IMG/VR virus record: IMGVR_UViG_3300028666_000022
Location: 186,001-250,000 of that record
Length of the DNA stretch: 64,000 nucleotides
Direction: 5' to 3' (one strand)
A program made the translations under genes and the position numbers. Position 1 is the first letter of the stretch; each line of letters opens with the position of its first letter. Positions 1 to 20,808 of the stretch are shown here, one piece after another. A model generated the notes under the pieces. The model worked only from the letters and a program-made list of their open reading frames with translations. It was not told the DNA's origin and did not search any database.

Positions 1-393
1 TAAAGATCGATTAACATAATTTCCAGATAAATCATTTGTATATTGAATTCCCTTAAAATTTGTATCTCCACTAATACTAAATGTTTTATTATTGACATTA
101 ATTAATGTATTTTTTATTAATGTGCCACCCAATTGAATACTTGTTCCTGATATATTTATACCATTTGTTGCATTAACTAACGATTTACTAATTAAATTAA
201 TATCTGCAACACCATTTTTATACCAATATTCTATACCACCAATATTTACGGTTAAACCAGTATATCTATATGATATTGGAACACCCAAATTTACTGCAGA
301 TGTAGATATCCAAGGCGTAGTAACATTTAAATATTTACTGTCAACTGGTTTACCAGTATTAATCGCTAAATTATCATTAAGTATTATTGACAT
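1..393 (-). CDS. Partial (runs off window) virion structural / tail-fibre-like protein
   Basis: Hand translation from ATG at 393: MSIILNDNLAINTGKPVDSKY...RYTGLTVNIGGIEYWYKNG...QLGGTL..., open to position 1. Absent from the ORF track because it is truncated. Gly/Thr/Asn-rich like its neighbours. Confidence 0.7.
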   Translation of the reverse strand, partial: MSIILNDNLAINTGKPVDSKYLNVTTPWISTSAVNLGVPISYRYTGLTVNIGGIEYWYKNGVADINLISKSLVNATNGINISGTSIQLGGTLIKNTLINVNNKTFSISGDTNFKGIQYTNDLSGNYVNRSL

Positions 394-421
394 CTCTTTA
401 TTTTATTTTCATATTTTTATT

Positions 422-2812
422 TTAGCTTACACACATTGGTACACCACATGCTGTTCCAGTTGTAGTACAACTAACATATACCATATAATTACAACCAGTC
501 CAACAACCTTGTGCTGATGTTACAGCAACAATACAATCCGTTGCAAATAAATTCCCAATACCACCAATACAACCATTATTTAAACTACTAACATACCAAC
601 AAGTTTTAACTGACGTACCATTTGGAACTGCAAACCATATATAATCACTTGGTGAACTGTTAAATATTATTGGTAGTGTACCACTAGCTGAAGCAATACA
701 TTTATTTCCTGCAGCAATATCAGAACTACCAAGTACCTGTGATGTACATTTTCCCCAATACCAAGGCAATATACCAGAAATTGATGATGAAGCAAAACTT
801 GTTGTTCCAGAAGACAATGGAGAACAATAATTACTACCACCACTTCCTTTTGGTTGAATACCAGAATTATATGTTGTATCTACTGACCATGTTTGACTTC
901 CACCAGAAACAACATAATTATTAGCTGTTTTAACTACGCTTGAACCACTACAAACATATAAACCCGCTACTTGAGAGCCAGTAAAACAATATTTATTTGC
1001 AGTTCCACTTCTAAATGGAGAAGTACTACAATATTGTGGACTAATAGATCCTCTATTAAAACATCCAGTAATATTTAAACTAGATATTGAACATCCGATT
1101 TCAAATGTACCTGAAGGAGATAATAAAATTGATGTACTTGGTGCAGTTAATGTACCAAATAATTCTGGTGCTAAAATATCTTGAAATAATTGAAATACTG
1201 TTTTTCCTGTTAATGCAGTACCAATAGTAATTCCACCAACAGTACATGTTGCTGGTGAATTTAGATTATATTTTGCATCATGAACTACAATAGTATTACC
1301 TACTTGGGATAATGCAGTACTACCACTACCCAATAATGAATTAAATCGTAAACAATTGTTTACTTTAGAATCAAATAAACCAATACCAGTTCCAATATTA
1401 ACAGCATTTGTCGTACCTGACGTAGTACCAGTGCTTGTTTGTGTTGCGCCAGAAATAAAAACAAAATTATCATCATAAGAAACACGTATAAGATCATTTG
1501 TTTTTGACATTATGGTTCTTAAATGAAGTTGTTGATTTGTTTTATTTACATAAACTGGTCCACCAATATTATATGTTGTTCCAGTAGTTAAACTACCACT
1601 AACATTTAAAACAACATTACCACCATTATTATATGCTCCTGTTGACCATGTAATACCACTATACATTGCACCAACAGCAGGAAACGCATTTAGAAATGTA
1701 CCAACAGTTTTTGTTATGTCACCATCAACCAAAATCCAACCAACTTGATTTGTTAATCCAGTATAAGTATTATATATCCATGATTTAACTGGAGTTGGTA
1801 TTGTTCTAACATAACCTCTTCTTAATGGTCCATTATAAATTGGAGAACCAATCCTAATTATACCATTAATATCTCTATAATAATAATTATAAACCGAATC
1901 ATATTCACCATTGTAAGCAGGATTAATAGTATTTGATATTATTAATTTTTGTATTCCAGTGCTTCCACTAAAATATCCAACATTTGTTGCACCAGTAACT
2001 GTTTTATTTAAAAATGTTTGTGTTGTACCAGTATATGTATTAAACTGTCCTAATGTAACACCTAGTTGTGTTTGTGTAGTTCCTCTATATTGTATAACAA
2101 TACCAGTATTACCACTAGCTAAAGTAATTAACATTGGTTTAGAAACTTGAGTTAAACCAGTTGGTGAAAATTTAGATAATTTTCCAGAAATACTTGCTAA
2201 ATAATACGTTCTCCCTGCAGTTAATGTTCCACCACTATAATCAACTACACCAGTAGTATTAATATTACCAGAAAAAGTTAAAGTAAAATTACTAATATCT
2301 TTTACAGTACTTACAATACCTAATGGTTCAACCGAAATCGCAGTTGTTGTAGAAACTTTAATAAAAATACTACCATTAAATCCAATTACATCTCCAACAA
2401 TAAAACCATGTGTCAATTGATAAAAATCTTTTGATATTTTTTCCCCCGCTGTAGAAGTACCACCACTAGTAAGAAAAACATTCCAATTGTTATTATCAGC
2501 AAGTGCAGTTAATTTTTGATTAGTAGTATATCCACTCCATACAGAATATGCTACAGATGGTTGTAAATGATATATTATATTATTTTCATATACATGAATA
2601 AGCATTCCTAATCTACGTTGTCCACTAGACAATCCATCAAAATTAATTCCATTAGTATAATCAACTGGTAACGCATCTCTTTCTACTATTGTCGAAACTT
2701 CCATGTATCCACCAACACCCAAAATTGAATGATGTGTACCATAAGTATCACCAGATGAACCTCTAACTATTGGAGAAGCTAATAATGTACCTGTATAATA
2801 TTGACCTGCCAT
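422..2812 (-). CDS. Virion structural protein (fibre/decoration-like), S/T/G-rich, Cys-rich C-terminal region
   Basis: 796 aa, beta-rich composition, THGFIVGDVIGFNG and LTAGRTYYLASISG segments typical of phage structural proteins; 18 Cys, all in the last ~310 aa. Confidence 0.6.
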   Translation of the reverse strand: MAGQYYTGTLLASPIVRGSSGDTYGTHHSILGVGGYMEVSTIVERDALPVDYTNGINFDGLSSGQRRLGMLIHVYENNIIYHLQPSVAYSVWSGYTTNQKLTALADNNNWNVFLTSGGTSTAGEKISKDFYQLTHGFIVGDVIGFNGSIFIKVSTTTAISVEPLGIVSTVKDISNFTLTFSGNINTTGVVDYSGGTLTAGRTYYLASISGKLSKFSPTGLTQVSKPMLITLASGNTGIVIQYRGTTQTQLGVTLGQFNTYTGTTQTFLNKTVTGATNVGYFSGSTGIQKLIISNTINPAYNGEYDSVYNYYYRDINGIIRIGSPIYNGPLRRGYVRTIPTPVKSWIYNTYTGLTNQVGWILVDGDITKTVGTFLNAFPAVGAMYSGITWSTGAYNNGGNVVLNVSGSLTTGTTYNIGGPVYVNKTNQQLHLRTIMSKTNDLIRVSYDDNFVFISGATQTSTGTTSGTTNAVNIGTGIGLFDSKVNNCLRFNSLLGSGSTALSQVGNTIVVHDAKYNLNSPATCTVGGITIGTALTGKTVFQLFQDILAPELFGTLTAPSTSILLSPSGTFEIGCSISSLNITGCFNRGSISPQYCSTSPFRSGTANKYCFTGSQVAGLYVCSGSSVVKTANNYVVSGGSQTWSVDTTYNSGIQPKGSGGSNYCSPLSSGTTSFASSSISGILPWYWGKCTSQVLGSSDIAAGNKCIASASGTLPIIFNSSPSDYIWFAVPNGTSVKTCWYVSSLNNGCIGGIGNLFATDCIVAVTSAQGCWTGCNYMVYVSCTTTGTACGVPMCVS

Positions 2813-2824
2813 TTCTAATTTATT

Positions 2825-3799
2825 TTAAACTACTATAATACTAAATGTTCCAGTTACTCTATTATCTGATCTTGCAACATAATATTGATTACTATATCCA
2901 TTTGTGTTTACAAACGTATTCGTATACAATGTACCAATATTTATATTTCCCCATGCATTATTTGGTAATCCATTTACAGTAAATGTTGGAGTTCCCAATA
3001 CTTTAGGATATGTATAATAAAAAAATTGATTATTTAACGTTATATTAATATTAAGTGCTTTAGTTGTTGATAATATACCAGTCGTAGCACTTAAAACTGG
3101 ATTTATTGCTGAATTACTATATAATGTAGCGTTACCAAAATAAAACTTCTTATTTTGCCAATTAATTGCTGTTGTTGAAGTAGTTGTTTCATTACAACAC
3201 GAAATTGCACATAAACTAAAACCAACTGACGTGCAAGTAATTCCTGAAGCTGGTGTTGTACAAATAAATGGATAAGTATAACTTACTGTTCCACCTGTTG
3301 TCCCAACAGAACCATTTGTTAATATTGCACAATTATATAATCCACTTCCATTAGTACTCCCACTTATATTACGAATAGGATACGTATTCCTTACTACATT
3401 CCAACATAAATTACCCACACTACAATCACCAAATTGCCTTGATGCACCACCAGTTGCAATACTTAAACTTGATGAAGGTCCAACTGCAGGAAAAAAATAA
3501 TTTTCAAGAAAGCATTGAACCGTACATCCTGTACCTGTATTTACTGCTGGAATCCCAGAACGAGTAGTAATACGATTTGTGTTAAAAACAGGAGTACTAC
3601 CAGCACCAGAACAGTGTAATTTAATTTTACCACCAATATATGTTAAAACAGTACCAGTAGTAGCACCAGTTGTAGCATCAATTTCAATTCCCTTTGATTT
3701 TAATACTCCAACAAAATTAGTCGTACCTGACATAGTTAAAGTACTACCAGTCAATTGTTTAAAACTTACATCTTCCAGATTAGGCCTAGCAAAGAACAT
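2825..3799 (-). CDS. Virion structural protein, S/T/G-rich with Cys-rich middle
   Basis: 324 aa, composition like the neighbouring gene; GTATTTATA motif upstream. Confidence 0.55.
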   Translation of the reverse strand: MFFARPNLEDVSFKQLTGSTLTMSGTTNFVGVLKSKGIEIDATTGATTGTVLTYIGGKIKLHCSGAGSTPVFNTNRITTRSGIPAVNTGTGCTVQCFLENYFFPAVGPSSSLSIATGGASRQFGDCSVGNLCWNVVRNTYPIRNISGSTNGSGLYNCAILTNGSVGTTGGTVSYTYPFICTTPASGITCTSVGFSLCAISCCNETTTSTTAINWQNKKFYFGNATLYSNSAINPVLSATTGILSTTKALNINITLNNQFFYYTYPKVLGTPTFTVNGLPNNAWGNINIGTLYTNTFVNTNGYSNQYYVARSDNRVTGTFSIIVV

Positions 3800-3870
3800 A
3801 TGTCTATATTGTATTTATATTATTTTTAATAATTTTAAATAAATTATATTATGTATTTTAATTTATTTAT

Positions 3871-3879
3871 TATAAATAC
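3871..3879 (-). promoter_or_regulatory. Candidate late promoter motif GTATTTATA
   Basis: TATAAATAC on + strand = GTATTTATA on the coding strand; recurs upstream of several structural genes. Confidence 0.5.
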
Positions 3880-3899
3880 AAAAAATTTTAATTAAAATC

Positions 3900-3935
3900 A
3901 AAAATCCTCACAAGATTTAACTTATGAGGATTTTT
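3900..3935. terminator. Intrinsic terminator hairpin downstream of helicase
   Basis: AAAAATCCTCA...TGAGGATTTTT inverted repeat with A/T runs on both sides. Confidence 0.7.
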
Positions 3936-3958
3936 AAAACAATAGTATGGCAATACTA

Positions 3959-6820
3959 TTAAAACTTATTTTTATTCATTTTCATTAATGTATTAATTAA
4001 AAACTTATCACTATCAGTCATTTCATCAACATTATTTATTCTACTCTCAACATCTTCAATACTCTCTTGCGTAATATTATGTTTTTTTAAAATATTTTCA
4101 TGTATCTCTTTATCAACATCAACATTATTATCAGATTCAATTTCAAGTAAATCATGTGCTGGTTGAACATTTTCTTCAACAATAATTGCTTCAATAATAT
4201 CATTATTTTTAGAATTATCAAACTCTTTAATATTATTTCCAAAATCCATTATATCCCCAACAGTTCTATTATCAGAACCATCTGTTGGGATAGCATCACA
4301 TATTCTAGCATGAAATTCTACGGCACTTGCTTTACTCTCTAATTTCTTAATTTCATCATCACCATATTTTTTTATACCTTTATATCTATTACTAGTATAT
4401 CTATCATCCTTAATAATAATTTCCATACTATCATTATTGAAAATACAGTCTTTAAATGTTTGTCCATCTTGAGCAAATCTAGCTTTAAGAATTCTAATAT
4501 TAGCCAAATGTGCTTCTTTTTGATCTGGTGTTTTAGCTACCGACATAAAAAAATGTGCTTTCTGTAATCTTTTAATTGATCCACCAGTATGATGTGATTC
4601 TACTAATTCTTGATCGATTGATCCGCGTCCTCCCTGTAATGCCGACCATGATGGTATATCAAAATCTGCTGCCATTGCTTCAAATGATTTTATTACGACA
4701 AGTTCAGCATCATTTTTATCATTTGTTTTTTTATGTGAATCAACACAATCAAGATAATCAAGAACTAAAATATCAAACTTAAATCCATGTTTTTTTTGAT
4801 ATCTTAAAATCCAACTACGAATATCTTTCATTGTTGTATCTTCTTGACTCATTCTTTTAATAATAAGTCTACCCTTATTTCCTAATTGTTCTATTTTTTC
4901 ATTTACTTTCTTTATGACAATATCATTATTATCATTAATTTCACTTAATTTAACATCACTCCAAATAGTATAATGTTTCCTTTTAATTTGATCTTCCGTA
5001 TCTTCAAATATTATTTGAAGTACATTATAATCTAATTCACGTGCAGTATTAGCTATTTTAGTTAAAATCGTTGTATTATGTGTTAATATATAATCATCAG
5101 TAACATATAAATGATCATCATTTTCAACATATATACATTGTGCATCTTCTTCATGTGAATAAGAAATATTCGAAATATATTTATTATTTTTATATTTTTC
5201 TCTATAAATAACACGATCTTGTTTTCTTTTTAACCTAAATGGTATTAACGTATTGTCAGAAAACGATAATGTTAAAATATACGATTTTTGTCCAATTCTT
5301 ATTTCATTATTATATTTATATTTTGGTATTTTTTCTCGTATACTACAAAATCCACCCAAAGATAAAATTAATTCTTTTACGTCTAAAGCTAATTGTTTAG
5401 AAACACTACAATATTGTATTCTTCCATTTTTTGATGCGTAACCATCAGTATCTAATAAACCATTTAATAATAAAATTCTATTTTCAATACTATTATATTT
5501 GTAATCATCAGGTATAAATTTATTATTAGATAATTTATCAAATAAATTATATTTTTTTAATTCATTTGAACATTTAAATAATCTTATAACAAATAAATCA
5601 TTTTTTTTATTTTTTAATTGTTTTATTGATATATTTTTATCATAAAATTTTTTAATATTATTAATAATTTCAATATCTCCACTAGTTATACGACTATCTC
5701 TCATATAACCATCACCTAACATAGCTCCAATTACATAAGGATGGATTAATACATTTTTCTCATTAAAATTAACTGGTTGAATTATTGGTATTCTGTAATT
5801 TAATTTATTTTCTGATTTTCCGGTCAACCTATAATTTTTCAGTAATGAATCAACGGTTAATGGTTTATATGTATAATTTGGTTTTTTTATATATTTACCC
5901 TTTATTTTAGTACTTAATGTTCGTTGATTTATTGAATTTACTGCCCAAAGATGTTCTTTATCACAAAATGTGGTTGTTTGATCATTAAATTCAATTTTAT
6001 AAATCGGCCTTTTCCCTTGTGGAAAAACACCTAAAACCTTTTGTGATTTTCCATCACTTCCAATAACTAAATCATTAACTTTAACATCACCCATTTTAAT
6101 CCATCCATTTGGTGTAAGTATTTTGGATGTAAGAGGTTGTGCTTTACCAACGCCACTAGGTGTTAAAATTAAACCAATTTCACCTTTACCAAGACCCCCA
6201 CCAGTTAATTCATCAATTACTTGAATACCAGTTGGTATTGTTTGTCTAAATTCTTTTCTTAATGCTTTTTCAATTCCTTCAGTAACATCAGTACCATAAT
6301 CTTCATCATCACCAATATGTCCAATTTTTTGAATTTTTTCTTCAATTAAAGCCAGAGTATTTTTTATTTTAATATCTCCATTTTTTGTCTTATCTAAAAT
6401 AAATTCACCTAATTTTCTATATTCTTGTTGTCTTATGAATGTATGTGTTGCTTTTTGAATTACATCGCCATCGTGTAATAATTGTTTATTTAAAACTCTT
6501 TCATTCCATAATTCAATTCTCCTAATAACTGAAAATAATGATTCTTCTTCAATTACATTATTCGGAGTTTTAAACTTATTTATGGCTTGATGTATACTTT
6601 GATTTTGAAGATTAGGTACTTTCTCAAATTCCTTAATAAATTCAAGTATAATTAGAAATAATCTTTTTAAATTAGGATCATCAAAATATTCAACAGCAAT
6701 ATCTGGTATTATTTTTTCTGCAAATTCTGGTTCTACCAACAGTTGCCACATTAATCTTTGTTGAAATTCAGGACCTAAATATGCTGTTAAAGTATTATCT
6801 TTATCAATATGCTCACTCAT
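3959..6820 (-). CDS. Replicative DnaB/T4 gp41-like helicase, interrupted by an intein
   Basis: IPTGIQVIDELTGGGLGKGE, Walker A TPSGVGK/T split by the intein, Walker B ILVLDYLD, ALQGGR, ILKARF. Confidence 0.9.
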   Translation of the reverse strand: MSEHIDKDNTLTAYLGPEFQQRLMWQLLVEPEFAEKIIPDIAVEYFDDPNLKRLFLIILEFIKEFEKVPNLQNQSIHQAINKFKTPNNVIEEESLFSVIRRIELWNERVLNKQLLHDGDVIQKATHTFIRQQEYRKLGEFILDKTKNGDIKIKNTLALIEEKIQKIGHIGDDEDYGTDVTEGIEKALRKEFRQTIPTGIQVIDELTGGGLGKGEIGLILTPSGVGKAQPLTSKILTPNGWIKMGDVKVNDLVIGSDGKSQKVLGVFPQGKRPIYKIEFNDQTTTFCDKEHLWAVNSINQRTLSTKIKGKYIKKPNYTYKPLTVDSLLKNYRLTGKSENKLNYRIPIIQPVNFNEKNVLIHPYVIGAMLGDGYMRDSRITSGDIEIINNIKKFYDKNISIKQLKNKKNDLFVIRLFKCSNELKKYNLFDKLSNNKFIPDDYKYNSIENRILLLNGLLDTDGYASKNGRIQYCSVSKQLALDVKELILSLGGFCSIREKIPKYKYNNEIRIGQKSYILTLSFSDNTLIPFRLKRKQDRVIYREKYKNNKYISNISYSHEEDAQCIYVENDDHLYVTDDYILTHNTTILTKIANTARELDYNVLQIIFEDTEDQIKRKHYTIWSDVKLSEINDNNDIVIKKVNEKIEQLGNKGRLIIKRMSQEDTTMKDIRSWILRYQKKHGFKFDILVLDYLDCVDSHKKTNDKNDAELVVIKSFEAMAADFDIPSWSALQGGRGSIDQELVESHHTGGSIKRLQKAHFFMSVAKTPDQKEAHLANIRILKARFAQDGQTFKDCIFNNDSMEIIIKDDRYTSNRYKGIKKYGDDEIKKLESKASAVEFHARICDAIPTDGSDNRTVGDIMDFGNNIKEFDNSKNNDIIEAIIVEENVQPAHDLLEIESDNNVDVDKEIHENILKKHNITQESIEDVESRINNVDEMTDSDKFLINTLMKMNKNKF
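5075..6142 (-). mobile_element. Intein (356 aa, class 3-type, Ala1) with LAGLIDADG homing endonuclease
   Basis: Begins AQPLTSKILTPNGW after GVGK and ends YILTHN/T. Block B CDKEHLW, block F AQCIYV, LAGLIDADG motifs PYVIGAMLGDG and LLNGLLDTDG. Confidence 0.9.
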
Positions 6821-6927
6821 TATTAATATATAACATATAAAAATACTAGGAATATCTGTAAAAATGTTATTATAAGATCAAAAATTTAGTTCAATCTTAT
6901 AATAACATGAATTTTAAAAAAATTGTT

Positions 6928-7263
6928 TTAACCAACAAGTTTTGTTAATAAACTACCTACTTCTATAAGTTTTGCATTTTCTATTGTCATTTCGTTAAGC
7001 AAAACATATAAATTATCTGTAATATTTTGTGGACTTTTTTCTTGAATATTATCAACTTTTACATCAACGTCTGGTTGAGTAAATTTACTAACACATCTTG
7101 AGAGGTAATTACTATTATCTCTCATTTTTAATATTTCGTTTCTAAATCTATCTAATATTTTATCAAATTCAGCTTTATCTTCAAGAATTTTATCTTGAAA
7201 AGTAGGATTCCTTGTACCATAAGTATTATTAGAATTTGATTCATTGTATGCACCAGCTATCAT
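6928..7263 (-). CDS. Hypothetical protein
   Basis: 111-aa ORF in operon orientation. Confidence 0.6.
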   Translation of the reverse strand: MIAGAYNESNSNNTYGTRNPTFQDKILEDKAEFDKILDRFRNEILKMRDNSNYLSRCVSKFTQPDVDVKVDNIQEKSPQNITDNLYVLLNEMTIENAKLIEVGSLLTKLVG

Positions 7264-7297
7264 AATATTAATTTTTAATTAATGAATCTCATTATTT

Positions 7298-7933
7298 TTA
7301 AACTCTAGTCATTCTTCTTATCATTTCTTCCCTTTTTGGAACTGAAAGTTGTCTTATTTGATCAATTGTTAATCCACAAGTATTAATCAAATCATAATCA
7401 TTCCACATATTTTTAATATCATTTTTCTTTATTCTATCAAAAATACTATCTGTTATTTCAACAACAGTATCTACTACATCAACAGAATATCTTGCAACTG
7501 GATTAAATCCATCAACATAAAATAATCTTTCAACTATTGGATTTTGATTTATATATAAACCCATTTTACATTCAACACCTCTAATAGTTTTTTCTTCAAT
7601 ATGTTGAACTCTCGTTTGTGGATTATAACGAATATCATTTCTATCTTCTTCAGGAAATGAATTTATTAAATTCTGCTGGTAATAATAAAGATCATAATAT
7701 ATATTCGGAGAATTATCAACATTAATATCTTCTCTTCCTACTTCAGCAATTACATCATACTTCTTTTTTGATAATACTTTCTGTAATTTACTTATTGCCT
7801 TTGGCAAAATATCCCTAATGTCTATGGAATACCTAGTAAAAGGATTAAATACATCAGCATCAAAAATTTTTTCACATAATAATACATTCCCCTGATATAA
7901 GGAAAACCTAAAAGCATTGTTATTATCACTCAT
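7298..7933 (-). CDS. Hypothetical protein (start revised to ATG at 7933, MSDNNN)
   Basis: The upstream extension in the ORF track is low-complexity and overlaps another small ORF; a TAnnTTTG box at 7965-7972 precedes this ATG. Confidence 0.65.
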   Translation of the reverse strand: MSDNNNAFRFSLYQGNVLLCEKIFDADVFNPFTRYSIDIRDILPKAISKLQKVLSKKKYDVIAEVGREDINVDNSPNIYYDLYYYQQNLINSFPEEDRNDIRYNPQTRVQHIEEKTIRGVECKMGLYINQNPIVERLFYVDGFNPVARYSVDVVDTVVEITDSIFDRIKKNDIKNMWNDYDLINTCGLTIDQIRQLSVPKREEMIRRMTRV

Positions 7934-7964
7934 ATTTTTAATTATTAATTTGTTTATAACACAA

Positions 7965-7972
7965 CAAATATA
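7965..7972 (-). promoter_or_regulatory. Bacteroidota-type -7 promoter box TATATTTG
   Basis: CAAATATA on + strand, intergenic, upstream of ATG 7933. Confidence 0.45.
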
Positions 7973-8001
7973 AATTATATTTTTTAATAGTAAAAGGGTT
8001 T

Positions 8002-8136
8002 TTAAAAAAATATAACAGAAATTAAAATAATTAATTGCACTAAATAAAATATTATTAAATATATGGCAAATAAAAACCATATAATTAATTTATTATTAGT
8101 TCCAATCAACTTAAACACATTGATAATTCTTTTCAT
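8002..8136 (-). CDS. Small single-pass membrane peptide (44 aa)
   Basis: Hand translation MKRIINVFKLIGTNNKLIIWFLFAIYLIIFYLVQLIILISVIFF; tightly packed behind 8148..8348. Confidence 0.4.
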   Translation of the reverse strand: MKRIINVFKLIGTNNKLIIWFLFAIYLIIFYLVQLIILISVIFF

Positions 8137-8147
8137 AAAATTATTTA

Positions 8148-8348
8148 TTAAAATAAATTAAAATAATCACTACACAATCCTCCAAATACCATTGCAAATA
8201 AATAACCAACAGGTATTGTACAAAAGAAAAACATTAAATACCAAGGATCGAAATGTAAATAATGCACCCCAATATAAGGAAATAACATTATTATAAATGT
8301 AATAATTATAATAATTAAGAAACATGAATAACCCACAATTTTTTTCAT
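8148..8348 (-). CDS. Small membrane protein (2 predicted TM segments)
   Basis: 66 aa, two hydrophobic stretches. Confidence 0.55.
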   Translation of the reverse strand: MKKIVGYSCFLIIIIITFIIMLFPYIGVHYLHFDPWYLMFFFCTIPVGYLFAMVFGGLCSDYFNLF

Positions 8349-8362
8349 AATTTTTCTTTTAA

Positions 8363-8827
8363 TTAAACATTTTCAATATTATATTCTTCAGGTATTAATA
8401 ATTCACATTTATTTGTATTATATATTCCAAACGTACTATCAATTTCTCTAAATTTATCTTCAATTTTATTTAATATTAATCCAGACAACATAAAAAGTTT
8501 AGCATTATATTCATCATAAGGAAAATCAATAATAATTTTTTTAAATTTTATTTCTTCAACAACAGGAATTAATTCATTTTTACTATATTCTAATAATTTA
8601 TATAATAAAAAATTTTTCTTAATATTATGATCAAATGAAACTAATTCTAAATTTATTTCATTATTATTCGTATTTTTTGAAATAAAAATAAAATATTTAA
8701 ATTTTTCTGAATCATATGTGCCATTAATCTTAATTTGTTCTTCTTTTTGTTTCTCATATTGTTTTCTTAAATCATCAAAACCTAAACGAAAAACAGTATT
8801 TATTTTTTCTTTTTTCATATTAATCAT
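8363..8827 (-). CDS. Hypothetical protein
   Basis: 154-aa ORF overlapping the exonuclease stop. Confidence 0.55.
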   Translation of the reverse strand: MINMKKEKINTVFRLGFDDLRKQYEKQKEEQIKINGTYDSEKFKYFIFISKNTNNNEINLELVSFDHNIKKNFLLYKLLEYSKNELIPVVEEIKFKKIIIDFPYDEYNAKLFMLSGLILNKIEDKFREIDSTFGIYNTNKCELLIPEEYNIENV

Positions 8828-9876
8828 AATTTAGTTTTACTATTTTTATAATACTCTGTTAATAACTGTTTTTCATTCATTATTACAGTATAAAACGGTT
8901 CGATATAATTAACAAATGTACTTCCATACACAGTCAAAAATTCATCTTCCACCATCATTTTATATAAATTCTTACTTCCTCTATTCTCTGGTGATAATGG
9001 CATTTCTAATTGTTCTAACTCATTTAAAGCCTGTTCATTTAAAAACGGTTCTTTTAAATTTATTAATTTATGATTTAATTTTAACCTCTCGACATTATTT
9101 AATAAATTCTCAAATGCCTTTAATGGTTTTAATTTCTTTGAAACTCTTTCCTTATTTAATTCTGCAGCTTTTTGACACACATCTTTTACACTAAAATGTT
9201 TGAACTGCATCTCTGGAAAATATTTTAATAATGTCGGTTCTTTTAACCCATCAATTCCTTTTATATTATCTGAAACATCTCCACATATTATTTTCATTGT
9301 TAATGCATTGGAATAATGATAACCAAAATTAAAAAAATAATTGGACTTTGTTACTGGCTGCTCTATATTTGAAAATATTATCGTTATATTCAAATCTAAT
9401 AATTGTGAAAAATCTCGATCATTGGTGAATATATGAATTTCTTCAGTATTATTATGATCTATGCAATATTTAGCAATTAGGTCATCAGCTTCCACCTCTA
9501 ATATTTCTAACTGTCTTACGAAGATTTCCTCAAGATAAGCTTGCGTCCTCTTGCGATTTGATAAAATACTCTTTGATTTCTCTTCTTCTCTTTTGATTTC
9601 AGCTTCAGACATTTCGATCTGGCTGTACCACTCCTTATTCTTTCTTGTAGATTTATAATCACTTGATAATCTGTGTCTTAGAACCCCACCATTTTGTCCA
9701 TCCCAACAAACAATAACTTTATTTATTTTATAATCTTTAATTAATTTACGTAATTTTGTGAGAAATCCATATAATCCAGAAATTTGCCCAAATGATTGTG
9801 TAAAAGTACTCTTACCTCCTTCAAATGAACGTTTTAGTAAATAATTACCATCAATTAATAATGTTCTATTTTTCAT
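8824..9876 (-). CDS. 5'-3' exonuclease / flap endonuclease (Pol I N-terminal or T4 RNase H-like)
   Basis: LLIDGN, VCWDG, YKSTRK, EADDLIA, TNDRDFSQL, GDVSDNIKGIDG motifs. Confidence 0.9.
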   Translation of the reverse strand: MKNRTLLIDGNYLLKRSFEGGKSTFTQSFGQISGLYGFLTKLRKLIKDYKINKVIVCWDGQNGGVLRHRLSSDYKSTRKNKEWYSQIEMSEAEIKREEEKSKSILSNRKRTQAYLEEIFVRQLEILEVEADDLIAKYCIDHNNTEEIHIFTNDRDFSQLLDLNITIIFSNIEQPVTKSNYFFNFGYHYSNALTMKIICGDVSDNIKGIDGLKEPTLLKYFPEMQFKHFSVKDVCQKAAELNKERVSKKLKPLKAFENLLNNVERLKLNHKLINLKEPFLNEQALNELEQLEMPLSPENRGSKNLYKMMVEDEFLTVYGSTFVNYIEPFYTVIMNEKQLLTEYYKNSKTKL

Positions 9877-9879
9877 TTC

Positions 9880-11496
9880 TTATTTTGTTTTAGGGAAAAA
9901 ATCATCTAACCAGCCATTTTTAGATGCAAAATCATAGAAACTTCTTTTTTTTGCTGCATAGTCTTTTCTACATGAATATTCTGTAGCATGATTTTTACAA
10001 ATAACATAATTATATTCAATTTTAGGTTTTTTTGGTAAAAATTCATCCAACCAATTAAATTTTACACAAACACGATATAATGTTTGGTTTTCTTTAGATA
10101 AAATACATCTATTCGAATATTTCAATGTTTCTTTTCTAGCATTTTCTTTATTTAAATAAAATTCTCTTGTTGTTAAATCTCTTTTTTTAATGGGGAATAA
10201 TTCATCTAATAAATTAAATTTAGTACAAAGACGATAAAGAGTATGATTCTTACTATAAAGCTCACTTCTGTTTTTAAATCCAACAACCTTATTTCTACAA
10301 TAAATTTCATCTTTATTTAATATTGGAAAAAATTCATTCAACCAATTATTTTCTAAGCAAATTCTATAGATTTTGGGGTTAGATTTATATAATTGTGTTC
10401 TATTTTCAAACTTTATTACTATATTTTTTATTTCTTCTTTATTTATTTTATTTTCAATTATTGGGAAAAATTCATCTAGCCATTTAGATTTTAAAGATTT
10501 AGAATATGCTGTTCCTTCATAATCGAAAAATGCTCTTTTATTAGTAAATTTAGATGCGACTAATTTACAACGAGATTTGGTCCAATAATTTTTTCCTTTA
10601 GATTTTTTTGTGTTCATATTAACACATACTTCATCTAAAATCCCCATTTGTTGAGCTGTTGAATAAGCACTACTGTTTTTAGCAAAAGCTGTACGTGTTT
10701 CAAATTTTTTTGCTTCTTCGAAAATTAGTTCTTTAGTCCACTTTCTTTGATTTCCACCTAAACTACCAGTTTTTGCTTTATTAATTTTTATTAATCCTTG
10801 TTTTTCTTTTTCTTCGAGAACAACACCTTCCATTTCAGATGCTAAATGAGCATTAATTATTCCAGAAATTTCTATTACTGGTTTAACACTATTTTTAATA
10901 ATATTATTTTTTTTTATAAATTCGAAAATACTACCTTCTCTCATATGATCACCATGTCTTCTTTTTATATTATTAGTTACACCAACATAAACATATTTAT
11001 CAAAAAATGTATATGAATATATCATTCTTTCTGTTTCTAAAACAACCGATTTTTTATTCATATGATCACATATTTCATTTAAAAAACCAGATTCTTTAGA
11101 AAAATTATAAATTTCTCGATTATTTTTATGAAATTCAGATTTAGTTTTCCATTTTTTAGAAAATTCTAAACATTCTAATTTAGACCATTTATCTAATTTA
11201 ATACATTCGTAAATTTCAGTAAGCCATCCATTTTGTCTAGCTACTGCACAAAGTGATAATTCTGAATGAGCCAACTCAAGTATTGAAGAATAAGTTCTAG
11301 CTATCTCCAAACATTTTGTTTTATTCCAAAATCCATTTGGTTTATGTTTTCTATTTAAATTTTTTAAAAGTTCTTTATTCCACCCTTTTCTATAAATTAA
11401 ATTATAAATGATTTTATTTTCCCTTTTTAAATCAATTAAATTCTCATAATTTTCAATTATTTTAATACAATCTTCTTTAGTATATAAACTTTTCAT
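9880..11496 (-). CDS. GIY-YIG endonuclease flanked by nine ~40-45 aa helical repeats
   Basis: IYSYTFFDKYVYVGVTNNIKRRHGDH...E...N catalytic core; repeats of the form W-T-K-x-x-C...Y...W-L-D-E-F-F-P. ATG at 11496 preferred over TTG at 11508. Confidence 0.75.
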   Translation of the reverse strand: MKSLYTKEDCIKIIENYENLIDLKRENKIIYNLIYRKGWNKELLKNLNRKHKPNGFWNKTKCLEIARTYSSILELAHSELSLCAVARQNGWLTEIYECIKLDKWSKLECLEFSKKWKTKSEFHKNNREIYNFSKESGFLNEICDHMNKKSVVLETERMIYSYTFFDKYVYVGVTNNIKRRHGDHMREGSIFEFIKKNNIIKNSVKPVIEISGIINAHLASEMEGVVLEEKEKQGLIKINKAKTGSLGGNQRKWTKELIFEEAKKFETRTAFAKNSSAYSTAQQMGILDEVCVNMNTKKSKGKNYWTKSRCKLVASKFTNKRAFFDYEGTAYSKSLKSKWLDEFFPIIENKINKEEIKNIVIKFENRTQLYKSNPKIYRICLENNWLNEFFPILNKDEIYCRNKVVGFKNRSELYSKNHTLYRLCTKFNLLDELFPIKKRDLTTREFYLNKENARKETLKYSNRCILSKENQTLYRVCVKFNWLDEFLPKKPKIEYNYVICKNHATEYSCRKDYAAKKRSFYDFASKNGWLDDFFPKTK

Positions 11497-11510
11497 TTTA
11501 AAATACAATT

Positions 11511-11541
11511 AAAAAGTGAATGGCATTTTACTACCATTCAC
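11511..11541 (-). terminator. Intrinsic terminator after recA-like gene
   Basis: GTGAATGG...CCATTCAC stem followed by a T-run on the minus strand. Confidence 0.65.
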
Positions 11542-11553
11542 ATATAAATTTAT

Positions 11554-12669
11554 TTATTCACCTTTTTTTTCTAAAAAATTACTAACATAAGATGAATCAT
11601 CATTATTAGTAATTTCAGTAATTTTCGTTTCAATATCTTCAGCATTTATATCATCACCAAAAAGATTTCTAAAATAAAGTATATTTTTCTTCTTATATAA
11701 ATCAATTTCATCAGGAAATACAAAACCATGTGGTGTTGATATTATAGTACCTTCCATTGATATACCCCCTAGTGGACCATCAACATGATTTTTCGCGATA
11801 TTAACCTTTGCCTCTATACCATAAGACACATCACGTTTTTTGGAAGTAGCTGTAACTCTTTTAGTTCCATGTGTAATTATGCCGCCAAAGTTATAAATTA
11901 ATCTTGAACCGAAGAAAAACGTCTCGCCCCCTTTGTGCTTAACTACTTTATTCATAGAGTCGTACCAGATCTTTTGAACACACACGATAGTGTTAGTATA
12001 TTGTTTATTTATTTTTCTACTATTTGGAATCGTATTATTAAGTAATGACATAAATGATTTTTCATATGCTCCAGAATTCCACATATTATTATCACTCTCA
12101 CTCTTTTCTAAAGCATTTATTGTTTTAATACAATTTAACGTACCAATTGAATCAATTCCAAAAAATAATTCATAAGGTAAATTACCTGCATTTTGTTCAT
12201 CTAAAAAGAAGTAAATACATTTAGCAAGATCTTCAATAGAAGCTTCATTTCTATCTTTATCTTGTTTTTTACCGAAATTTTCAAGTAAATATTCATTATC
12301 AATTAAAATATAATCACCTTTCCAATCGAAACCCATTAATTCTAATCTATCAACACCTAAATTATTTTCAGTATCGATAATAATTGGTAACAACCCCATT
12401 TTCTGCGCGTTAACTAAGCCACGACAAACAGCGGTCGATTTTCCGGTATTGGAGTACCCACGACACAAATTAACAAATCCCTTAGCAAAGCCGGGCAGTC
12501 CAGTTGATTTTTCAAGTGCATCATCGCATTTAATCCATTGTAATGGTTTATCTGGTATATCTTCAGCACCAACCTTTTTCTTAAAATCATTTAAAGAAAA
12601 TTCCTTTTTTGCAGTAGGTTTTCTAACTGGATTATTAACAGGAACTTCAATATTTTCTTTTTTAGCCAT
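11554..12669 (-). CDS. RecA/UvsX-like recombinase
   Basis: Walker A RGYSNTGKST, IIIDTE, FGIDSIG, KGG...F, KNHV. Confidence 0.85.
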   Translation of the reverse strand: MAKKENIEVPVNNPVRKPTAKKEFSLNDFKKKVGAEDIPDKPLQWIKCDDALEKSTGLPGFAKGFVNLCRGYSNTGKSTAVCRGLVNAQKMGLLPIIIDTENNLGVDRLELMGFDWKGDYILIDNEYLLENFGKKQDKDRNEASIEDLAKCIYFFLDEQNAGNLPYELFFGIDSIGTLNCIKTINALEKSESDNNMWNSGAYEKSFMSLLNNTIPNSRKINKQYTNTIVCVQKIWYDSMNKVVKHKGGETFFFGSRLIYNFGGIITHGTKRVTATSKKRDVSYGIEAKVNIAKNHVDGPLGGISMEGTIISTPHGFVFPDEIDLYKKKNILYFRNLFGDDINAEDIETKITEITNNDDSSYVSNFLEKKGE

Positions 12670-12733
12670 AAAATTTAATTTAAAATATTACAATTATTTA
12701 CTGTGAAATATATTATTCACATATTTAAAAAAT

Positions 12734-12766
12734 AAAAAGATAGGGACACTAAGTTCCCCATCCTTT
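12734..12766 (-). terminator. Intrinsic terminator after SSB gene
   Basis: Minus-strand AAGGAUGGGGA...UCCCUAUCUUUUU stem with G-U pairs and U tail. Confidence 0.6.
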
Positions 12767-12778
12767 AAGAGTATGAAA

Positions 12779-14005
12779 TTAAAAGGGTAAATCTTCGTAG
12801 TCGTTATCACTAGAGCCACTAGTTTCATCAATTTCTAGTGATTCATCAGCAACTTTACTTTTAGCAGTAATATCGACAGCATCTTCACTATAAGTACCAA
12901 CTTTACTAGGAGTAACATTAGTAATGTTTACACGTGCATCATTTTCGTCTAAATCAGAAGCTTGTTGAAAATCATCTTCTTCATCAGCATCAAGATTTCT
13001 TTGACGAGTATTAGCTTTTTCTTCCAAGTCAGGACGGCCCGGAAAAACCCAATGTTTATTTTTTTGATCAGTATCTTCCCAATAAGGAGAAGTACCATTA
13101 ACGATCATTTCAAGGAATTCTAAAGCAGTTGTATTAGGAGCAACTTTAGGTTTAAAAACATCTCTCCAAGTAATATCATCTTCAAGCCATTGTCTTGCAA
13201 CAATAGAATCATTATGAAGAGGTGATTTACCACGTGCAGTAATAGCTGAAATAGACTTATATGTCTTACCCTTTTCTTTACTAAAAGTAGCTACAGTATC
13301 AGCCATAGTAATATAAAGATCAGTACCATTATTAACATCAGCAAAACTAACACCGTTAATGTCAATATAATCTTCAAGAACTGGATATAACTTATCTATC
13401 GTACCCTGATTTTTGAAACTATGTTTAAATCTCCAAAATTTAACACCGTTATTTTCTCTCGATCTATCTATACCCCTTACGATATAAAATCGTTTTGCTT
13501 CCCAATTATTTGCTTCAAAGAATATAGCTTTATTTTTTTCAAAAACTACTTTCTGAGCGTCAGTTAAAATTTCTTTTTTAATGAACTTAATTGATTGATC
13601 TTGTTTAGCAAGAAGTTTCTTAGCTCTTTCACAAAGAGGACATGGAGCAGAAACTAAAATAGGATTTCCATTACCGTCTAACATCACATTACCATCCTTA
13701 TCATATTTTTTTACTTTAGGATCATTGTGAGCTGGACAATAAACAACTGTGTTAAGTTTTTTAAAACCACCTGCAGCGTTAGTTGGAACAACGTGAAAGA
13801 ATGCTTCTGTGTAAAAATTTTTAGATTTGTAAGGTAAGATTCTAAAGATTTCTTTAGTGTTTCGAGGAACAAAATACTTTGCCAGTATTTCTTCTTTTGT
13901 TTTTTTCTTATCTTTCACTTGATTTTTTTGGTAGTCAGAAAAAGATTTTCTGAATTCAGACAAATCACCACCTTGTGGGTTTGTTGTTGCATTTTGATTT
14001 TCCAT
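12779..14005 (-). CDS. Single-stranded DNA-binding protein (T4 gp32-like)
   Basis: FRILP, Zn-ligand-like H...YCP...PCPLC, GVKFWRF, acidic tail DYEDLPF; adjacent to recombinase. Start revised to ATG 14005 (MENQ). Confidence 0.8.
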   Translation of the reverse strand: MENQNATTNPQGGDLSEFRKSFSDYQKNQVKDKKKTKEEILAKYFVPRNTKEIFRILPYKSKNFYTEAFFHVVPTNAAGGFKKLNTVVYCPAHNDPKVKKYDKDGNVMLDGNGNPILVSAPCPLCERAKKLLAKQDQSIKFIKKEILTDAQKVVFEKNKAIFFEANNWEAKRFYIVRGIDRSRENNGVKFWRFKHSFKNQGTIDKLYPVLEDYIDINGVSFADVNNGTDLYITMADTVATFSKEKGKTYKSISAITARGKSPLHNDSIVARQWLEDDITWRDVFKPKVAPNTTALEFLEMIVNGTSPYWEDTDQKNKHWVFPGRPDLEEKANTRQRNLDADEEDDFQQASDLDENDARVNITNVTPSKVGTYSEDAVDITAKSKVADESLEIDETSGSSDNDYEDLPF

Positions 14006-14058
14006 TTTTTGATAATTACAAATAAAATTATTTTTTTCAATTATAAAAATTGACAATA

Positions 14059-14087
14059 CAAATATATTTCTAAGTTTTTATAAATAC
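14059..14087 (-). promoter_or_regulatory. Tandem promoter candidates upstream of SSB: TATATTTG (14059-14066) and GTATTTATA (14079-14087)
   Basis: Both motifs lie in the intergenic region on the coding strand. Confidence 0.45.
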
Positions 14088-14132
14088 TAGAGTTTTAAAA
14101 AATAAATTAAAAATATTTTTAAAACCTTATTC

Positions 14133-15566: not shown

Positions 15567-15577
15567 AACATTTTTTA

Positions 15578-15586
15578 TATAAATAC
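15578..15586 (-). promoter_or_regulatory. Candidate late promoter GTATTTATA
   Basis: 11 nt upstream of ATG 15566 on the coding strand. Confidence 0.55.
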
Positions 15587-15590
15587 TAAC

Positions 15591-15618
15591 AAAAAAGAGT
15601 ATAATTAAATACTCTTTT
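15591..15618. terminator. Intrinsic terminator hairpin
   Basis: AAAAGAGTAT-aattaa-ATACTCTTTT perfect inverted repeat. Confidence 0.65.
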
Positions 15619-15644
15619 AATATGATTTATTAATTGTTTTTATC

Positions 15645-17615: not shown

Positions 17616-17657
17616 GTTCTAAAAATATAATCTAATTTATTGTTATTTTTTCTTATT

Positions 17658-18143: not shown

Positions 18144-18171
18144 TAAAACATGTGAATTAAAATAAATTTAT

Positions 18172-18301: not shown

Positions 18302-18317
18302 TATTTTCAAATATTTT

Positions 18318-19070: not shown

Positions 19071-19082
19071 ACACTAAAAATA

Positions 19083-19235: not shown

Positions 19236-19254
19236 GATAATTTATATTATTTTA

Positions 19255-19263: not shown

Positions 19264-19273
19264 TATGTAATTA

Positions 19274-20794: not shown

Positions 20795-20808
20795 AATATT
20801 TTAAAATT

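What the first reader, a model, noticed from the sequence alone, without database searches (positions are those of the whole stretch)
1..3799. Over-represented [S/T]-G-x-T motif in virion proteins: candidate sequon for a phage-encoded protein glycosylation system
Seen: by hand count [S/T]GxT occurs 18 times in the 796-aa protein (SGDT, SGYT, SGGT x2, TGLT x2, SGNT, TGTT x3, TGAT, SGST x2, SGIT, SGAT, SGTT x2, TGKT). It occurs 7 times in the 324-aa protein, twice in the 131-aa partial ORF, 3 times in 14133..15566, and once each in the hub-like and spike proteins. A rough composition-based expectation for the 796-aa protein is only about 3. The copies sit in unrelated contexts rather than in a tandem domain repeat, as expected for a short modification signal. 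Inference: these are O-glycosylation acceptor sites for the phage's own glycosyltransferases (20-43 kb and 53-55 kb), giving a glycan-coated virion analogous to giant-virus fibril glycosylation. The motif differs from the Bacteroidota host O-glycosylation sequon D-[S/T]-[A/I/L/M/T/V].
Basis: partly seen in the sequence, partly recalled or inferred. Interest (0 to 1): 0.85.

Follow-up and report, generated by a model that had tools for sequence, protein, structure and literature searches.

The report
Fibre-protein [S/T]GxT motif, function unproven
The tail-fibre-like proteins of an uncultured ~340-kb phage carry a short motif (hydrophobic-[Ser/Thr]-Gly-x-Thr) five to seven times more often than chance allows, but whether it is a sugar-attachment site or only a structural turn cannot be settled from sequence.

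Summary
The counts are exact: 18, 7, 2 and 3 copies. The enrichment is far beyond chance (18 vs 2.97 expected; 0 of 20,000 shuffles reach 18).

It is hydrophobic-[S/T]-G-x-T. Ser and Thr are equally enriched at position 1, only Thr is enriched at position 4, and Gly is obligatory.

Where it is enriched:
- 120 homologues of the 796-aa protein (5.7x).
- 120 homologues of the unrelated 324-aa protein (4.2x).
- Five more fibre-like genes just beyond the window.

Where it is not enriched:
- Ordinary proteins of the same phages.
- Tail fibres of T4, crAss001 and B40-8.

It is a protein-level motif, not a DNA motif, and not a domain repeat.

The glycan genes are real. All glycosyltransferases (GTs) in the window are soluble. 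One bifunctional GT is a core gene next to a gp25-like baseplate gene.

Every long relative contig whose status could be checked carries the core GT, so no GT-less control was found.

The copies sit at strand ends, turns and helix N-caps. Some lie in 16-21-residue periodic rungs.

My estimate: structural or assembly turn motif ~0.45; glycosylation sequon ~0.3. Mass spectrometry is needed to decide.

The parts
422..2812 (-). 796-aa tail-fibre-like protein with 18 [S/T]GxT copies. The N-terminal ~510 aa is conserved across the family and the C-terminal Cys-rich beta domain is variable.
   Evidence: Counts and shuffles. There are 139 metagenomic homologues, and the 120 listed are enriched 5.7x pooled. 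The AF2 model has pLDDT 82.6 and is multi-domain beta. BFVD matches to tail-fibre and tail proteins reach E 1e-13 to 1e-9. No Pfam or PHROG match.
2825..3799 (-). 324-aa fibre-like protein with 7 copies. The N-terminal ~100 aa is modelled with low confidence and holds 4 of the 7. The C-terminal part forms two Ig/FN3-like beta sandwiches.
   Evidence: Its own family of 120 homologues is enriched 4.2x with coupling odds ratio 5.1. AF2 pLDDT is 85.2. PDB fold matches are only generic beta-sandwich adhesin domains.
1..393 (-). First 131 codons of a 489-aa fibre-like gene that runs off the window start. It has 2 copies here and 9 in the full-length protein.
   Evidence: The full gene is at L001 12411..13889, with 9 copies vs 1.4 expected.
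1958..1996 (-). The two most conserved copies of the 796-aa protein: TGAT (residue 273, present in 96% of homologues) and SGST (residue 282, 85%). They lie inside the family's most conserved sequence block.
   Evidence: AF2 gives pLDDT below 50 for residues 263-280.
2744..2755 (-). SGDT at residue 20 of the 796-aa protein, present in 95% of homologues.
1574..1585 (-). TGTT at residue 410 of the 796-aa protein, present in 94% of homologues.
3719..3730 (-). SGTT at residue 24 of the 324-aa protein. Ser, Gly and Thr are nearly invariant across 120 homologues (S 115, G 119, T 119).
14133..15566 (-). 477-aa protein with 3 copies, two of them overlapping (TGYTGTT). It is not S/T/G-rich and is a marginal case.
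   Evidence: 3 vs 0.28, P = 0.002. No family match.
41247..42869 (-). 540-aa bifunctional glycosyltransferase (GT2_5 plus GT4 domains). It is a core gene of the clade and the most plausible enzyme if fibres are glycosylated.
   Evidence: Pfam. It is 52-74% identical in relatives and always lies next to the baseplate genes. Its N-domain was found in 464 IMG/VR stretches, including every long fibre-bearing contig in the listed top 80. No TM segment.
42926..43240 (-). 104-aa gp25-like baseplate wedge subunit, immediately next to the core GT.
   Evidence: PHROG 7145 and 232, E 3e-4 to 7e-4. Conserved with the GT in relatives.
20153..41256 (-). Hypervariable nucleotide-sugar and glycosyltransferase island. 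Its genes are GDP-mannose 4,6-dehydratase, DegT aminotransferase, hexapeptide acyltransferase, SDR, methyltransferases, a FabH-like enzyme, WcbI, GT2, an RmlD-like enzyme, a Polysacc_synt_2 dehydratase, GT17, UDP-GlcNAc 2-epimerase and a GT32+GT2 protein.
   Evidence: Pfam. The island is 21 kb here and 4-10 kb, with other content, between the same flanking genes in relatives. No polytopic membrane proteins.
54051..54869 (+). 272-aa GT2 glycosyltransferase, conserved at 63-71% identity in relatives together with its two unannotated neighbours (52875..54020 and 54898..55770).
50145..51077 (-). Baseplate hub protein. It anchors the tail module that includes the 840-aa and 1088-aa proteins, each with one motif copy and no enrichment.
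   Evidence: PHROG 150, E 3.6e-9. Counts.

Best explanation
The 796-aa and 324-aa proteins, with five neighbouring genes just outside the window, are tail-fibre or receptor-binding-type proteins of an uncultured ~340-kb phage. Hydrophobic-[S/T]-G-x-T is a genuine, sharply defined motif specific to the fibre proteins of this phage clade.

Most likely it is a local folding or assembly element. A beta strand ends on the hydrophobic residue. Gly takes the turn conformation. The position-1 Ser/Thr and the position-4 Thr cap the turn or the start of the next strand or helix.

The element would recur because fibre genes of this clade are built from, and exchange, short shaft and turn modules that contain it. 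The enrichment, specificity, conservation and position in predicted secondary structure are shown. The capping geometry and the absence of modification are inferred. This reading does not exclude that some copies are also glycosylated.
For: Position in the models:
- In the AF2 models nearly all copies are in coil directly after a strand.
- Several put the position-4 Thr exactly at the start of the next element: T96 before H97, T236 at E236, T499 before E500, T538 before H539 in the 796-aa protein; T93 before H94 and T188 before E189 in the 324-aa protein.

Residue preferences:
- Gly is obligatory.
- The x position favours turn formers (G, A, D, K, N).
- Position -1 is F/L/Y/V/I in about 60% of copies, and position +5 is I/V.

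Periodicity and shared modules:
- In the 695-aa and 296-aa neighbours the motif sits at the same place in successive 16-residue rungs (IIGGxNNxIx[ST]GNTx) and in homologous repeats.
- Spacings of 16, 20 and 21 residues are over-represented in this phage.
- Short shared modules carry it. FxTYTGxT...(V/I)TGATN occurs in both the 796-aa and 489-aa proteins. The 324-aa and 333-aa proteins share the same 7+20 spacing at their N-termini.

Conservation and distribution:
- The most conserved copies are embedded in the most conserved block of the family.
- Enrichment is highest in the shaft-like N-terminal part (7.5x) and lower in the C-terminal head domains (3x).
- Density is independent of the size of the sugar island.
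Against: - A generic turn preference should show up elsewhere, but the coupling between [S/T] before Gly and Thr two residues after it is absent in controls. The odds ratio is 1.1 in T4, crAss001 and B40-8 ORFs (0.86 for their S/T/G-rich ORFs) and 1.1 in ordinary proteins of the same phages. It is 5-8 in the fibre proteins.
- Asn and Asp, good turn residues, are depleted at position 1 (0.76x and 0.62x). Val, Ile and Ser are not enriched at position 4 (1.27x, 0.88x, 1.06x), so hydroxyl groups seem to be required at both ends.
- The motif occurs in domains with no detectable homology.
- Many sites turn over between homologues.
- About a third of the copies in the 796-aa protein fall in the 10% of residues that AF2 cannot place. 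These include an S/T-rich linker (residues 457-467) that looks like a classic O-glycosylated linker.
- Burial could not be measured because no coordinates were returned.
Confidence: 0.45

Rival explanations
1. The motif is an acceptor determinant for cytoplasmic O-glycosylation of folded fibre proteins. The enzymes would be soluble phage GTs, most plausibly the core 540-aa GT beside the baseplate genes and/or the conserved GT2 at 54 kb. The hypervariable island would supply and extend strain-specific sugars.
For: - The motif has sequon-like sharpness: S and T are equal at position 1, only T at position 4, Gly is obligatory, and the coupling odds ratio is 5-8.
- It is fold-independent and confined to fibre-like proteins of this clade.
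- Some sites are conserved while others turn over, yet copy number stays about 5-6x above expectation in all 120 homologues.
- Copies lie in loops and in low-confidence or S/T-rich linkers.
- A large sugar cluster is present with only soluble proteins.
- A core GT is embedded in the tail module next to a gp25-like gene.
- The island is hypervariable, as expected for a surface glycan under diversifying selection.
- From my own knowledge, precedents exist for short-motif cytoplasmic glycosylation of beta-rich adhesins (HMW1C; AIDA-I/TibC heptosyltransferases). EOGT has an aromatic-[T/S]-G acceptor context.
Against: - There is no direct evidence of modification.
- The GTs match no characterised protein glycosyltransferase.
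- Motif density does not track island size.
- No GT-less relative was found for comparison.
- The only established phage virion glycosylation, in mycobacteriophages, is reported at the C-termini of capsid and tail-tube subunits, with no sequon mentioned (as summarised in PMC12619734).
- Periodic rungs and strand-end positions are explained more simply by structure.
- The GTs could instead serve DNA modification or host-envelope modification.
Confidence: 0.3
2. The motif serves another sequence-specific function. It could be a docking site for a fibre-assembly chaperone or for fibre-to-fibre or baseplate attachment, a different post-translational modification, or a repeated low-affinity contact site for a host surface polymer.
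For: - The most conserved copies lie in N-terminal segments that AF2 cannot place as monomers, as expected for inter-subunit or attachment regions.
- N-terminal modules with the same motif spacing are shared by otherwise different fibre proteins.
- The motif is clade-specific.
Against: - No candidate chaperone or modifying enzyme other than the GTs was identified near the fibre genes.
- Copies are also scattered through globular domains.
Confidence: 0.12
3. The enrichment is an artefact of S/T/G-rich composition, post-hoc motif picking, or a DNA-level signal.
For: - The proteins are 32-36% S+T+G.
- Other S/T/G arrangements are mildly enriched, for example [ST].GT at 2.0x and [ST]GT at 1.65x.
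Against: - Global and local shuffles never reach the observed count.
- The motif is the top pattern of about 48,000 tested.
- It replicates in independent proteins and in a second family.
- S/T/G-rich fibres of T4, crAss001 and B40-8, and the S/T/G-rich ORFs of locus L107, show none.
- There are 47 distinct 12-mers among 51 copies, and both Ser codon families are used at background frequencies.
Confidence: 0.02

Closest known systems
Mycobacteriophage virion glycosylation (Freeman et al. 2023, as summarised in PMC12619734)
   Same: Phage-encoded glycosyltransferases are proposed or shown to decorate virion proteins made in the cytoplasm.
   Different: There the glycans are reported at the C-termini of capsid and tail-tube subunits, with no sequon mentioned. 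Here the candidates are fibre proteins with an internal four-residue motif, and nothing has been shown biochemically. The GT families are unrelated as far as tested (no match in GenBank phages).
Cytoplasmic hyperglycosylation of bacterial adhesins: HMW1C N-glycosyltransferase on N-x-S/T, and AIDA-I/TibA heptosylation by Aah/TibC (from my own knowledge)
   Same: Soluble GTs modify many copies of a short motif, or a strand-loop-strand element, in long beta-rich adhesive proteins before export or assembly. AIDA-type rungs contain S-G-G turns.
   Different: No GT41 or heptosyltransferase homologue was found in the window. The motif is different. Modification is untested.
Bacteroidota general O-glycosylation sequon D-[S/T]-[A/I/L/M/T/V]
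   Same: It is a three-to-four-residue Ser/Thr-centred motif in surface proteins of the presumed host phylum.
   Different: That system works in the periplasm on exported proteins. Here position -1 is hydrophobic rather than Asp, and position +1 is invariably Gly. The motif is not that sequon.
Sequence signatures of fibrous viral and bacterial proteins: adenovirus triple beta-spiral shaft repeat, YadA-like head repeats, beta-solenoid rungs (from my own knowledge)
   Same: These are short Gly-containing turn motifs flanked by hydrophobic strand residues. They recur many times with little other sequence similarity. The 695-aa neighbour combines NSVAMxGG YadA-like repeats with 16-residue rungs that carry the motif.
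   Different: In the 796-aa protein the copies are irregularly spaced, lie in five non-homologous domains, and require hydroxyl residues at both ends.
Giant-virus virion glycosylation: chlorovirus Vp54 atypical sequons and mimivirus fibril glycans (from my own knowledge)
   Same: A large virus-encoded nucleotide-sugar and GT cluster without membrane components. The cluster content varies between related viruses.
   Different: Those are eukaryotic viruses with experimentally determined glycans. Here the acceptor is unknown and the virus is a tailed phage.
'Moraphages', large aquatic phages with predicted Bacteroidota hosts and four core GT orthogroups (PMC12619734)
   Same: They are uncultured jumbo phages with several core glycosyltransferases of unknown target. 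The fold matches here point to phages of Bacteroidota (crAss-like and Tenacibaculum phages).
   Different: Their genomes are 200-307 kb, against 300-365 kb for the long contigs here. Membership was not tested.

Membership tests
Phage tail fibre / receptor-binding protein | Fold similarity to known tail-fibre or tail proteins | tested here: met
   BFVD Foldseek gave 55 matches at E <= 1e-3. The best reach 1e-13 to 1e-9 and include proteins named tail fibre, tail protein and minor tail protein from crAss-like and Tenacibaculum phages. ESM Atlas neighbours carry Mtd_N, Phage_tail_C, BppL_N and Phage_fiber_rpt (leads only).
Phage tail fibre / receptor-binding protein | Modular build: conserved N-terminal part with exchangeable C-terminal domains | tested here: met
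   Many homologues align only to the N-terminal ~510 aa of the 796-aa protein (query coverage about 60-70%). The C-terminal parts fall into 4 BLAST clusters.
Phage tail fibre / receptor-binding protein | Match to a curated tail-fibre family model | tested here: not met
   No Pfam or PHROG family for the 796-, 324-, 131- or 477-aa proteins.
Phage tail fibre / receptor-binding protein | Presence in purified virions | not testable with these tools
   The phage is uncultured, and no relative exists in GenBank phages.
Protein-glycosylation sequon system | A short acceptor motif over-represented in the target proteins and not in other proteins | tested here: met
   Enrichment of 4-7.5x with coupling odds ratio 5-8 in fibre proteins, against 1.1 elsewhere.
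Protein-glycosylation sequon system | A glycosyltransferase that acts on protein | tested here: inconclusive
   Eight GT domains are present and all are soluble. None resembles a characterised protein GT. One is core and embedded in the tail module.
Protein-glycosylation sequon system | Motif and enzyme co-occur, and the motif is lost where the enzyme is absent | tested here: inconclusive
   Every long fibre-bearing contig in the listed top 80 of 464 matches has the core GT domain, and three long contigs could not be assessed. No contrast exists. Motif density is unchanged when the sugar island shrinks from 21 kb to 4-10 kb.
Protein-glycosylation sequon system | Acceptor residues solvent-exposed | tested here: inconclusive
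   Copies lie in coil, turn or low-pLDDT segments. No coordinates were returned, so accessibility was not computed.
Protein-glycosylation sequon system | Sugar found on the motif by mass spectrometry | not testable with these tools
   This needs glycoproteomics.
Bacteroidota general O-glycosylation (D-[S/T]-[A/I/L/M/T/V]) | Asp before the acceptor and an aliphatic residue or Thr after it | tested here: not met
   Position -1 is F/L/Y/V/I and position +1 is always Gly.
Tandem structural repeat (beta-solenoid or shaft repeat) | Regular period and homologous repeat units | tested here: inconclusive
   Met locally in the 695/296-aa neighbours, which have 16-residue rungs and homologous repeats, and spacings of 16/20/21 are over-represented. 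Not met in the 796-aa protein, where spacing is irregular and hhalign probability between domains is below 1%.

The most novel reading that the evidence does not exclude
A clade of uncultured ~300-365-kb phages glycosylates its own tail fibres in the host cytoplasm at a dedicated sequon, hydrophobic-[S/T]-G-x-T. A core bifunctional glycosyltransferase encoded beside the baseplate genes would do this. A hypervariable island of soluble sugar-nucleotide enzymes and GTs would give each phage strain its own glycan coat. This would be the first sequon-directed protein glycosylation system described in a bacteriophage.
Probability: 0.3. Interest if true: 0.85.

Novelty: new variant of a known kind. 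Interest (0 to 1): 0.55.

Why it matters
If the motif is a sequon, phage fibre glycosylation could be read from sequence. That would open questions about immune or defence shielding, host-range control and strain-specific glycan coats in huge phages, and it would provide a compact tag-plus-enzyme pair for glyco-engineering. If the motif is structural, it is a new signature for recognising fibre proteins in a large group of uncultured phages whose fibres escape Pfam and PHROG. In either case the hypothesis is now precise enough to test with one co-expression experiment: a defined motif, defined conserved copies, and two conserved candidate GTs.

Tried and rejected
- **Chance or composition:** rejected by global and local shuffles, an all-pattern scan and independent replication.
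- **DNA-level motif:** rejected.
- **Cryptic domain repeats in the 796-aa protein:** rejected by hhalign.
- **Generic grammar of beta-rich fibres:** rejected by T4 gp34-37 (8 vs 4.7), crAss001 and B40-8 tail proteins (12 vs 9.7), and coupling odds ratios of about 1.
- **Comparison with GT-less relatives:**
  - The first pattern scans missed divergent GT orthologues.
  - A more diverse alignment then found the GT N-domain in every long fibre-bearing contig in the listed top 80 of 464, so no GT-less relative was available.
- **The search for related loci with the full 82-sequence alignment:** failed because no stretch was conserved enough. A 104-column core alignment worked.
- **Structure and family searches:**
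  - PDB fold searches of both models gave only generic Ig/FN3-like sandwiches.
  - PDB and NCBIfam sequence searches of the GTs were uninformative.
  - tblastn of the fibre proteins and the core GT against GenBank phages found no relatives.
- **Literature:**
  - A search for an SGXT/TGXT motif found nothing relevant.
  - The Freeman 2023 paper was not held.
- **Solvent accessibility of the motif:** could not be computed because the structure tool returns no coordinates.

Full report
**What the window is**

The window is part of IMG/VR contig IMGVR_UViG_3300028666_000022 (339,898 bp), with about 25% G+C. It is an uncultured huge phage.
- It encodes a DnaB-like helicase carrying an intein, a UvsX-like recombinase and an exonuclease.
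- It has a baseplate hub and a gp25-like wedge subunit.
- It has no relatives among GenBank phages for the proteins of interest.

**The observation**

- The 796-aa protein (422..2812, minus strand) has 18 copies of [S/T]GxT against 2.97 expected. None of 20,000 shuffles reaches 18.
- The 324-aa protein has 7 against 1.37 (P = 3e-4).
- Shuffling within 10-40-residue windows barely raises the expectation (3.2-3.9). SG.T is the most extreme of about 48,000 gapped three-residue patterns.
- The locus fetched around the gene (L001) shows that the window cuts a cluster of seven S/T/G-rich genes. Together they hold 52 copies against about 9 expected.
- All other window ORFs hold 8 against 6.1.

**The motif is sharper than described**

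Pooled over 120 homologues of the 796-aa protein:

| Pattern | Enrichment |
|---|---|
| SG.T | 6.1x |
| TG.T | 5.5x |
| NG.T | 0.76x |
| DG.T | 0.62x |
| AG.T | 1.3x |
| [ST]G.S | 1.06x |
| [ST]G.V | 1.27x |
| [ST]G.I | 0.88x |
| [ST]A.T | 1.7x |
| reversed motif | 1.4x |
| motif with a hydrophobic residue in front | 11x (60% of copies) |

Coupling around Gly. A Ser or Thr before Gly and a Thr two residues after it are strongly coupled:

| Protein set | Odds ratio |
|---|---|
| 796-aa family | 8.2 |
| Unrelated 324-aa family | 5.1 |
| All S/T/G-rich ORFs of the related phage loci | 6.4 |
| Ordinary ORFs of the same loci | 1.1 |
| T4, crAss001 and B40-8 | 1.1 |

- T4 long-fibre proteins hold 8 copies against 4.7 expected.
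- crAss001 and B40-8 tail proteins hold 12 against 9.7.
- The motif is encoded by 47 different 12-mers among 51 copies, with background codon usage, so it acts at protein level.
- hhalign finds no homology among the five domains of the 796-aa protein.

**What the proteins are**

No Pfam or PHROG model matches them.
- The AF2 model of the 796-aa protein (pLDDT 82.6) is a chain of beta domains joined by low-confidence linkers.
- It matches predicted structures of phage tail-fibre and tail proteins at E 1e-13 to 1e-9, notably from crAss-like and Tenacibaculum phages.
- The family keeps the N-terminal ~510 residues and swaps C-terminal domains.
- The 324-aa protein (pLDDT 85.2) has a poorly placed N-terminal 100 residues and two Ig/FN3-like sandwiches.
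- Lying beside a helicase gene is no objection. T4's fibre genes 34-38 also lie just downstream of replication genes such as rnh, 59 and 32.
- I take these to be fibre or receptor-binding proteins, at about 85% (my estimate).

**Where the copies sit**

- Almost all are in coil directly after a strand.
- Several place the last Thr at the first position of the next strand or as a helix N-cap.
- About a third of the copies in the 796-aa protein overlap the 10% of residues with pLDDT below 50. These include the two most conserved copies (TGAT at 273, SGST at 282) and an S/T-rich linker (457-467).
- Conservation is mixed. Residues 20, 273, 282 and 410 carry the motif in 85-96% of homologues. Other sites carry it in 13-50%, and homologues have copies where the reference has none.
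- Gly and the position-4 Thr are the most conserved positions.
- In the neighbouring 695-aa and 296-aa proteins the motif recurs at the same place in 16-residue rungs. Spacings of 16, 20 and 21 are over-represented. Short modules carrying the motif are shared between otherwise unrelated fibre genes.
- Enrichment is 7.5x in the N-terminal part and 3x in the C-terminal head domains.

**The glycan genes**

Pfam confirms the following:
- GDP-mannose 4,6-dehydratase, a DegT aminotransferase, a hexapeptide acyltransferase and an SDR.
- Methyltransferases, a FabH-like enzyme and WcbI.
- An RmlD-like reductase, a Polysacc_synt_2 dehydratase and UDP-GlcNAc 2-epimerase.
- GT2, GT17, GT32+GT2 and GT2_5+GT4 proteins, and a further GT2 at 54 kb.

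None of the real genes has multiple membrane segments. There is no flippase, polymerase or initiating transferase.

Comparison with relatives gives two results.
- The 540-aa GT2_5+GT4 enzyme is a core gene. It is 52-74% identical and always sits next to the gp25-like gene and the 1088-aa, 840-aa and hub proteins.
- Its N-domain occurs in 464 IMG/VR stretches, including every long fibre-bearing contig in the listed top 80. Three long contigs could not be assessed.
- The region between that GT and the next conserved gene is hypervariable. It is 21 kb here and 4-10 kb, with different content, in relatives.
- Fibre motif density is the same, 4.6-11x, in all of them.

**Weighing the readings**

Composition, chance and DNA-level explanations are excluded.

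The structural reading is favoured by:
- The strand-end, turn and N-cap positions.
- Obligatory Gly, turn-forming residues at x, and hydrophobic residues at -1 and +5.
- The periodic rungs and shared modules.
- The shaft-over-head bias.

The sequon reading is favoured by:
- Hydroxyl groups being required at both ends, while Asn/Asp and Val/Ile are not accepted.
- The absence of any such coupling in other phages' fibres.
- Occurrence in non-homologous domains, and site turnover with a maintained copy number.
- Presence in flexible S/T-rich linkers.
- Soluble GTs, one of them core and embedded in the tail module.

Neither reading can be excluded without chemistry. I put the structural or assembly motif at about 0.45, the sequon at about 0.3, another recognition role at about 0.12, and artefact at about 0.02.

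A link to the core GTs remains possible.

**Comparison with what is known**

- Phage virion glycosylation is established only for mycobacteriophages, at the C-termini of capsid and tail-tube subunits (as summarised in PMC12619734).
- Short-motif cytoplasmic glycosylation of beta-rich adhesins is known in bacteria (from my own knowledge).
- The motif is not the Bacteroidota periplasmic sequon.
- No paper in the library describes an SGXT/TGXT motif.

Noticed in passing
window 19910..41246: A glycan gene island flanked by conserved genes is hypervariable between related phages, much like an O-antigen or capsule locus. It is 21 kb here and 4-10 kb, with different gene content, in loci L085, L087, L090, L091, L097 and L103.
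   Followed up: partly
window 41247..43240: A bifunctional GT2_5+GT4 glycosyltransferase is a core gene sitting directly beside a gp25-like baseplate wedge gene. Its N-domain has 464 relatives in IMG/VR but none in GenBank phages. In L103 and L106 only the N-terminal (GT2_5) half aligned.
   Followed up: partly
window 3959..6820: A DnaB-like replicative helicase is interrupted by an intein (Hint plus LAGLIDADG_3 domains at residues ~230-510).
   Followed up: no
window 24239..27821: The DegT-like aminotransferase ORF is short (285 aa against a 360-position profile, matched in two stretches). It is followed by two CapR/DUF4379/DUF723 zinc-ribbon proteins (26098..26889 and 26973..27821). This may be a mobile insertion inside the sugar island.
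   Followed up: no
window 27856..33703: The island encodes a hexapeptide acyltransferase, an SDR, methyltransferases, a FabH-like ketoacyl synthase III and WcbI. Together these suggest acylated or methylated deoxy-amino sugars. An MT-A70 adenine methyltransferase (31024..31599) sits among them.
   Followed up: no
L001 17651..20680 (beyond the window start): Two fibre-like genes (695 and 296 aa) combine YadA-like NSVAMxGG repeats, many Cys residues and 16-residue IIGGxNNxIx[ST]GNT rungs. The 296-aa protein aligns to three places in the 695-aa protein.
   Followed up: partly
window 47392..49914: The conserved 840-aa protein between the hub and the 1088-aa protein has three to four hydrophobic TM-like segments at residues ~587-730. 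This would fit a tape-measure or ejection protein.
   Followed up: no
window 9880..11508, 56476..57081, 61149..62681: Several nuclease genes that may be mobile are present: a GIY-YIG domain protein, an endonuclease VII-like protein and an HNH-type homing endonuclease.
   Followed up: no
protein P0055 / IMGVR_UViG_3300029288_000055: A 362,763-bp contig of this phage clade is deposited at NCBI inside a 'Candidatus Paceibacterota bacterium' MAG. It is probably a phage contig binned with a bacterial genome.
   Followed up: no
L107 2553..8272: A more distant phage shares the 1088-aa baseplate protein. Its S/T/G-rich ORFs (27-34% S+T+G) show no motif enrichment (6 vs 4.6 expected). Whether that phage has the core GT is unknown because the contig ends there.
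   Followed up: partly
window 1..64000: ARAGORN finds no tRNA genes in the window.
   Followed up: yes
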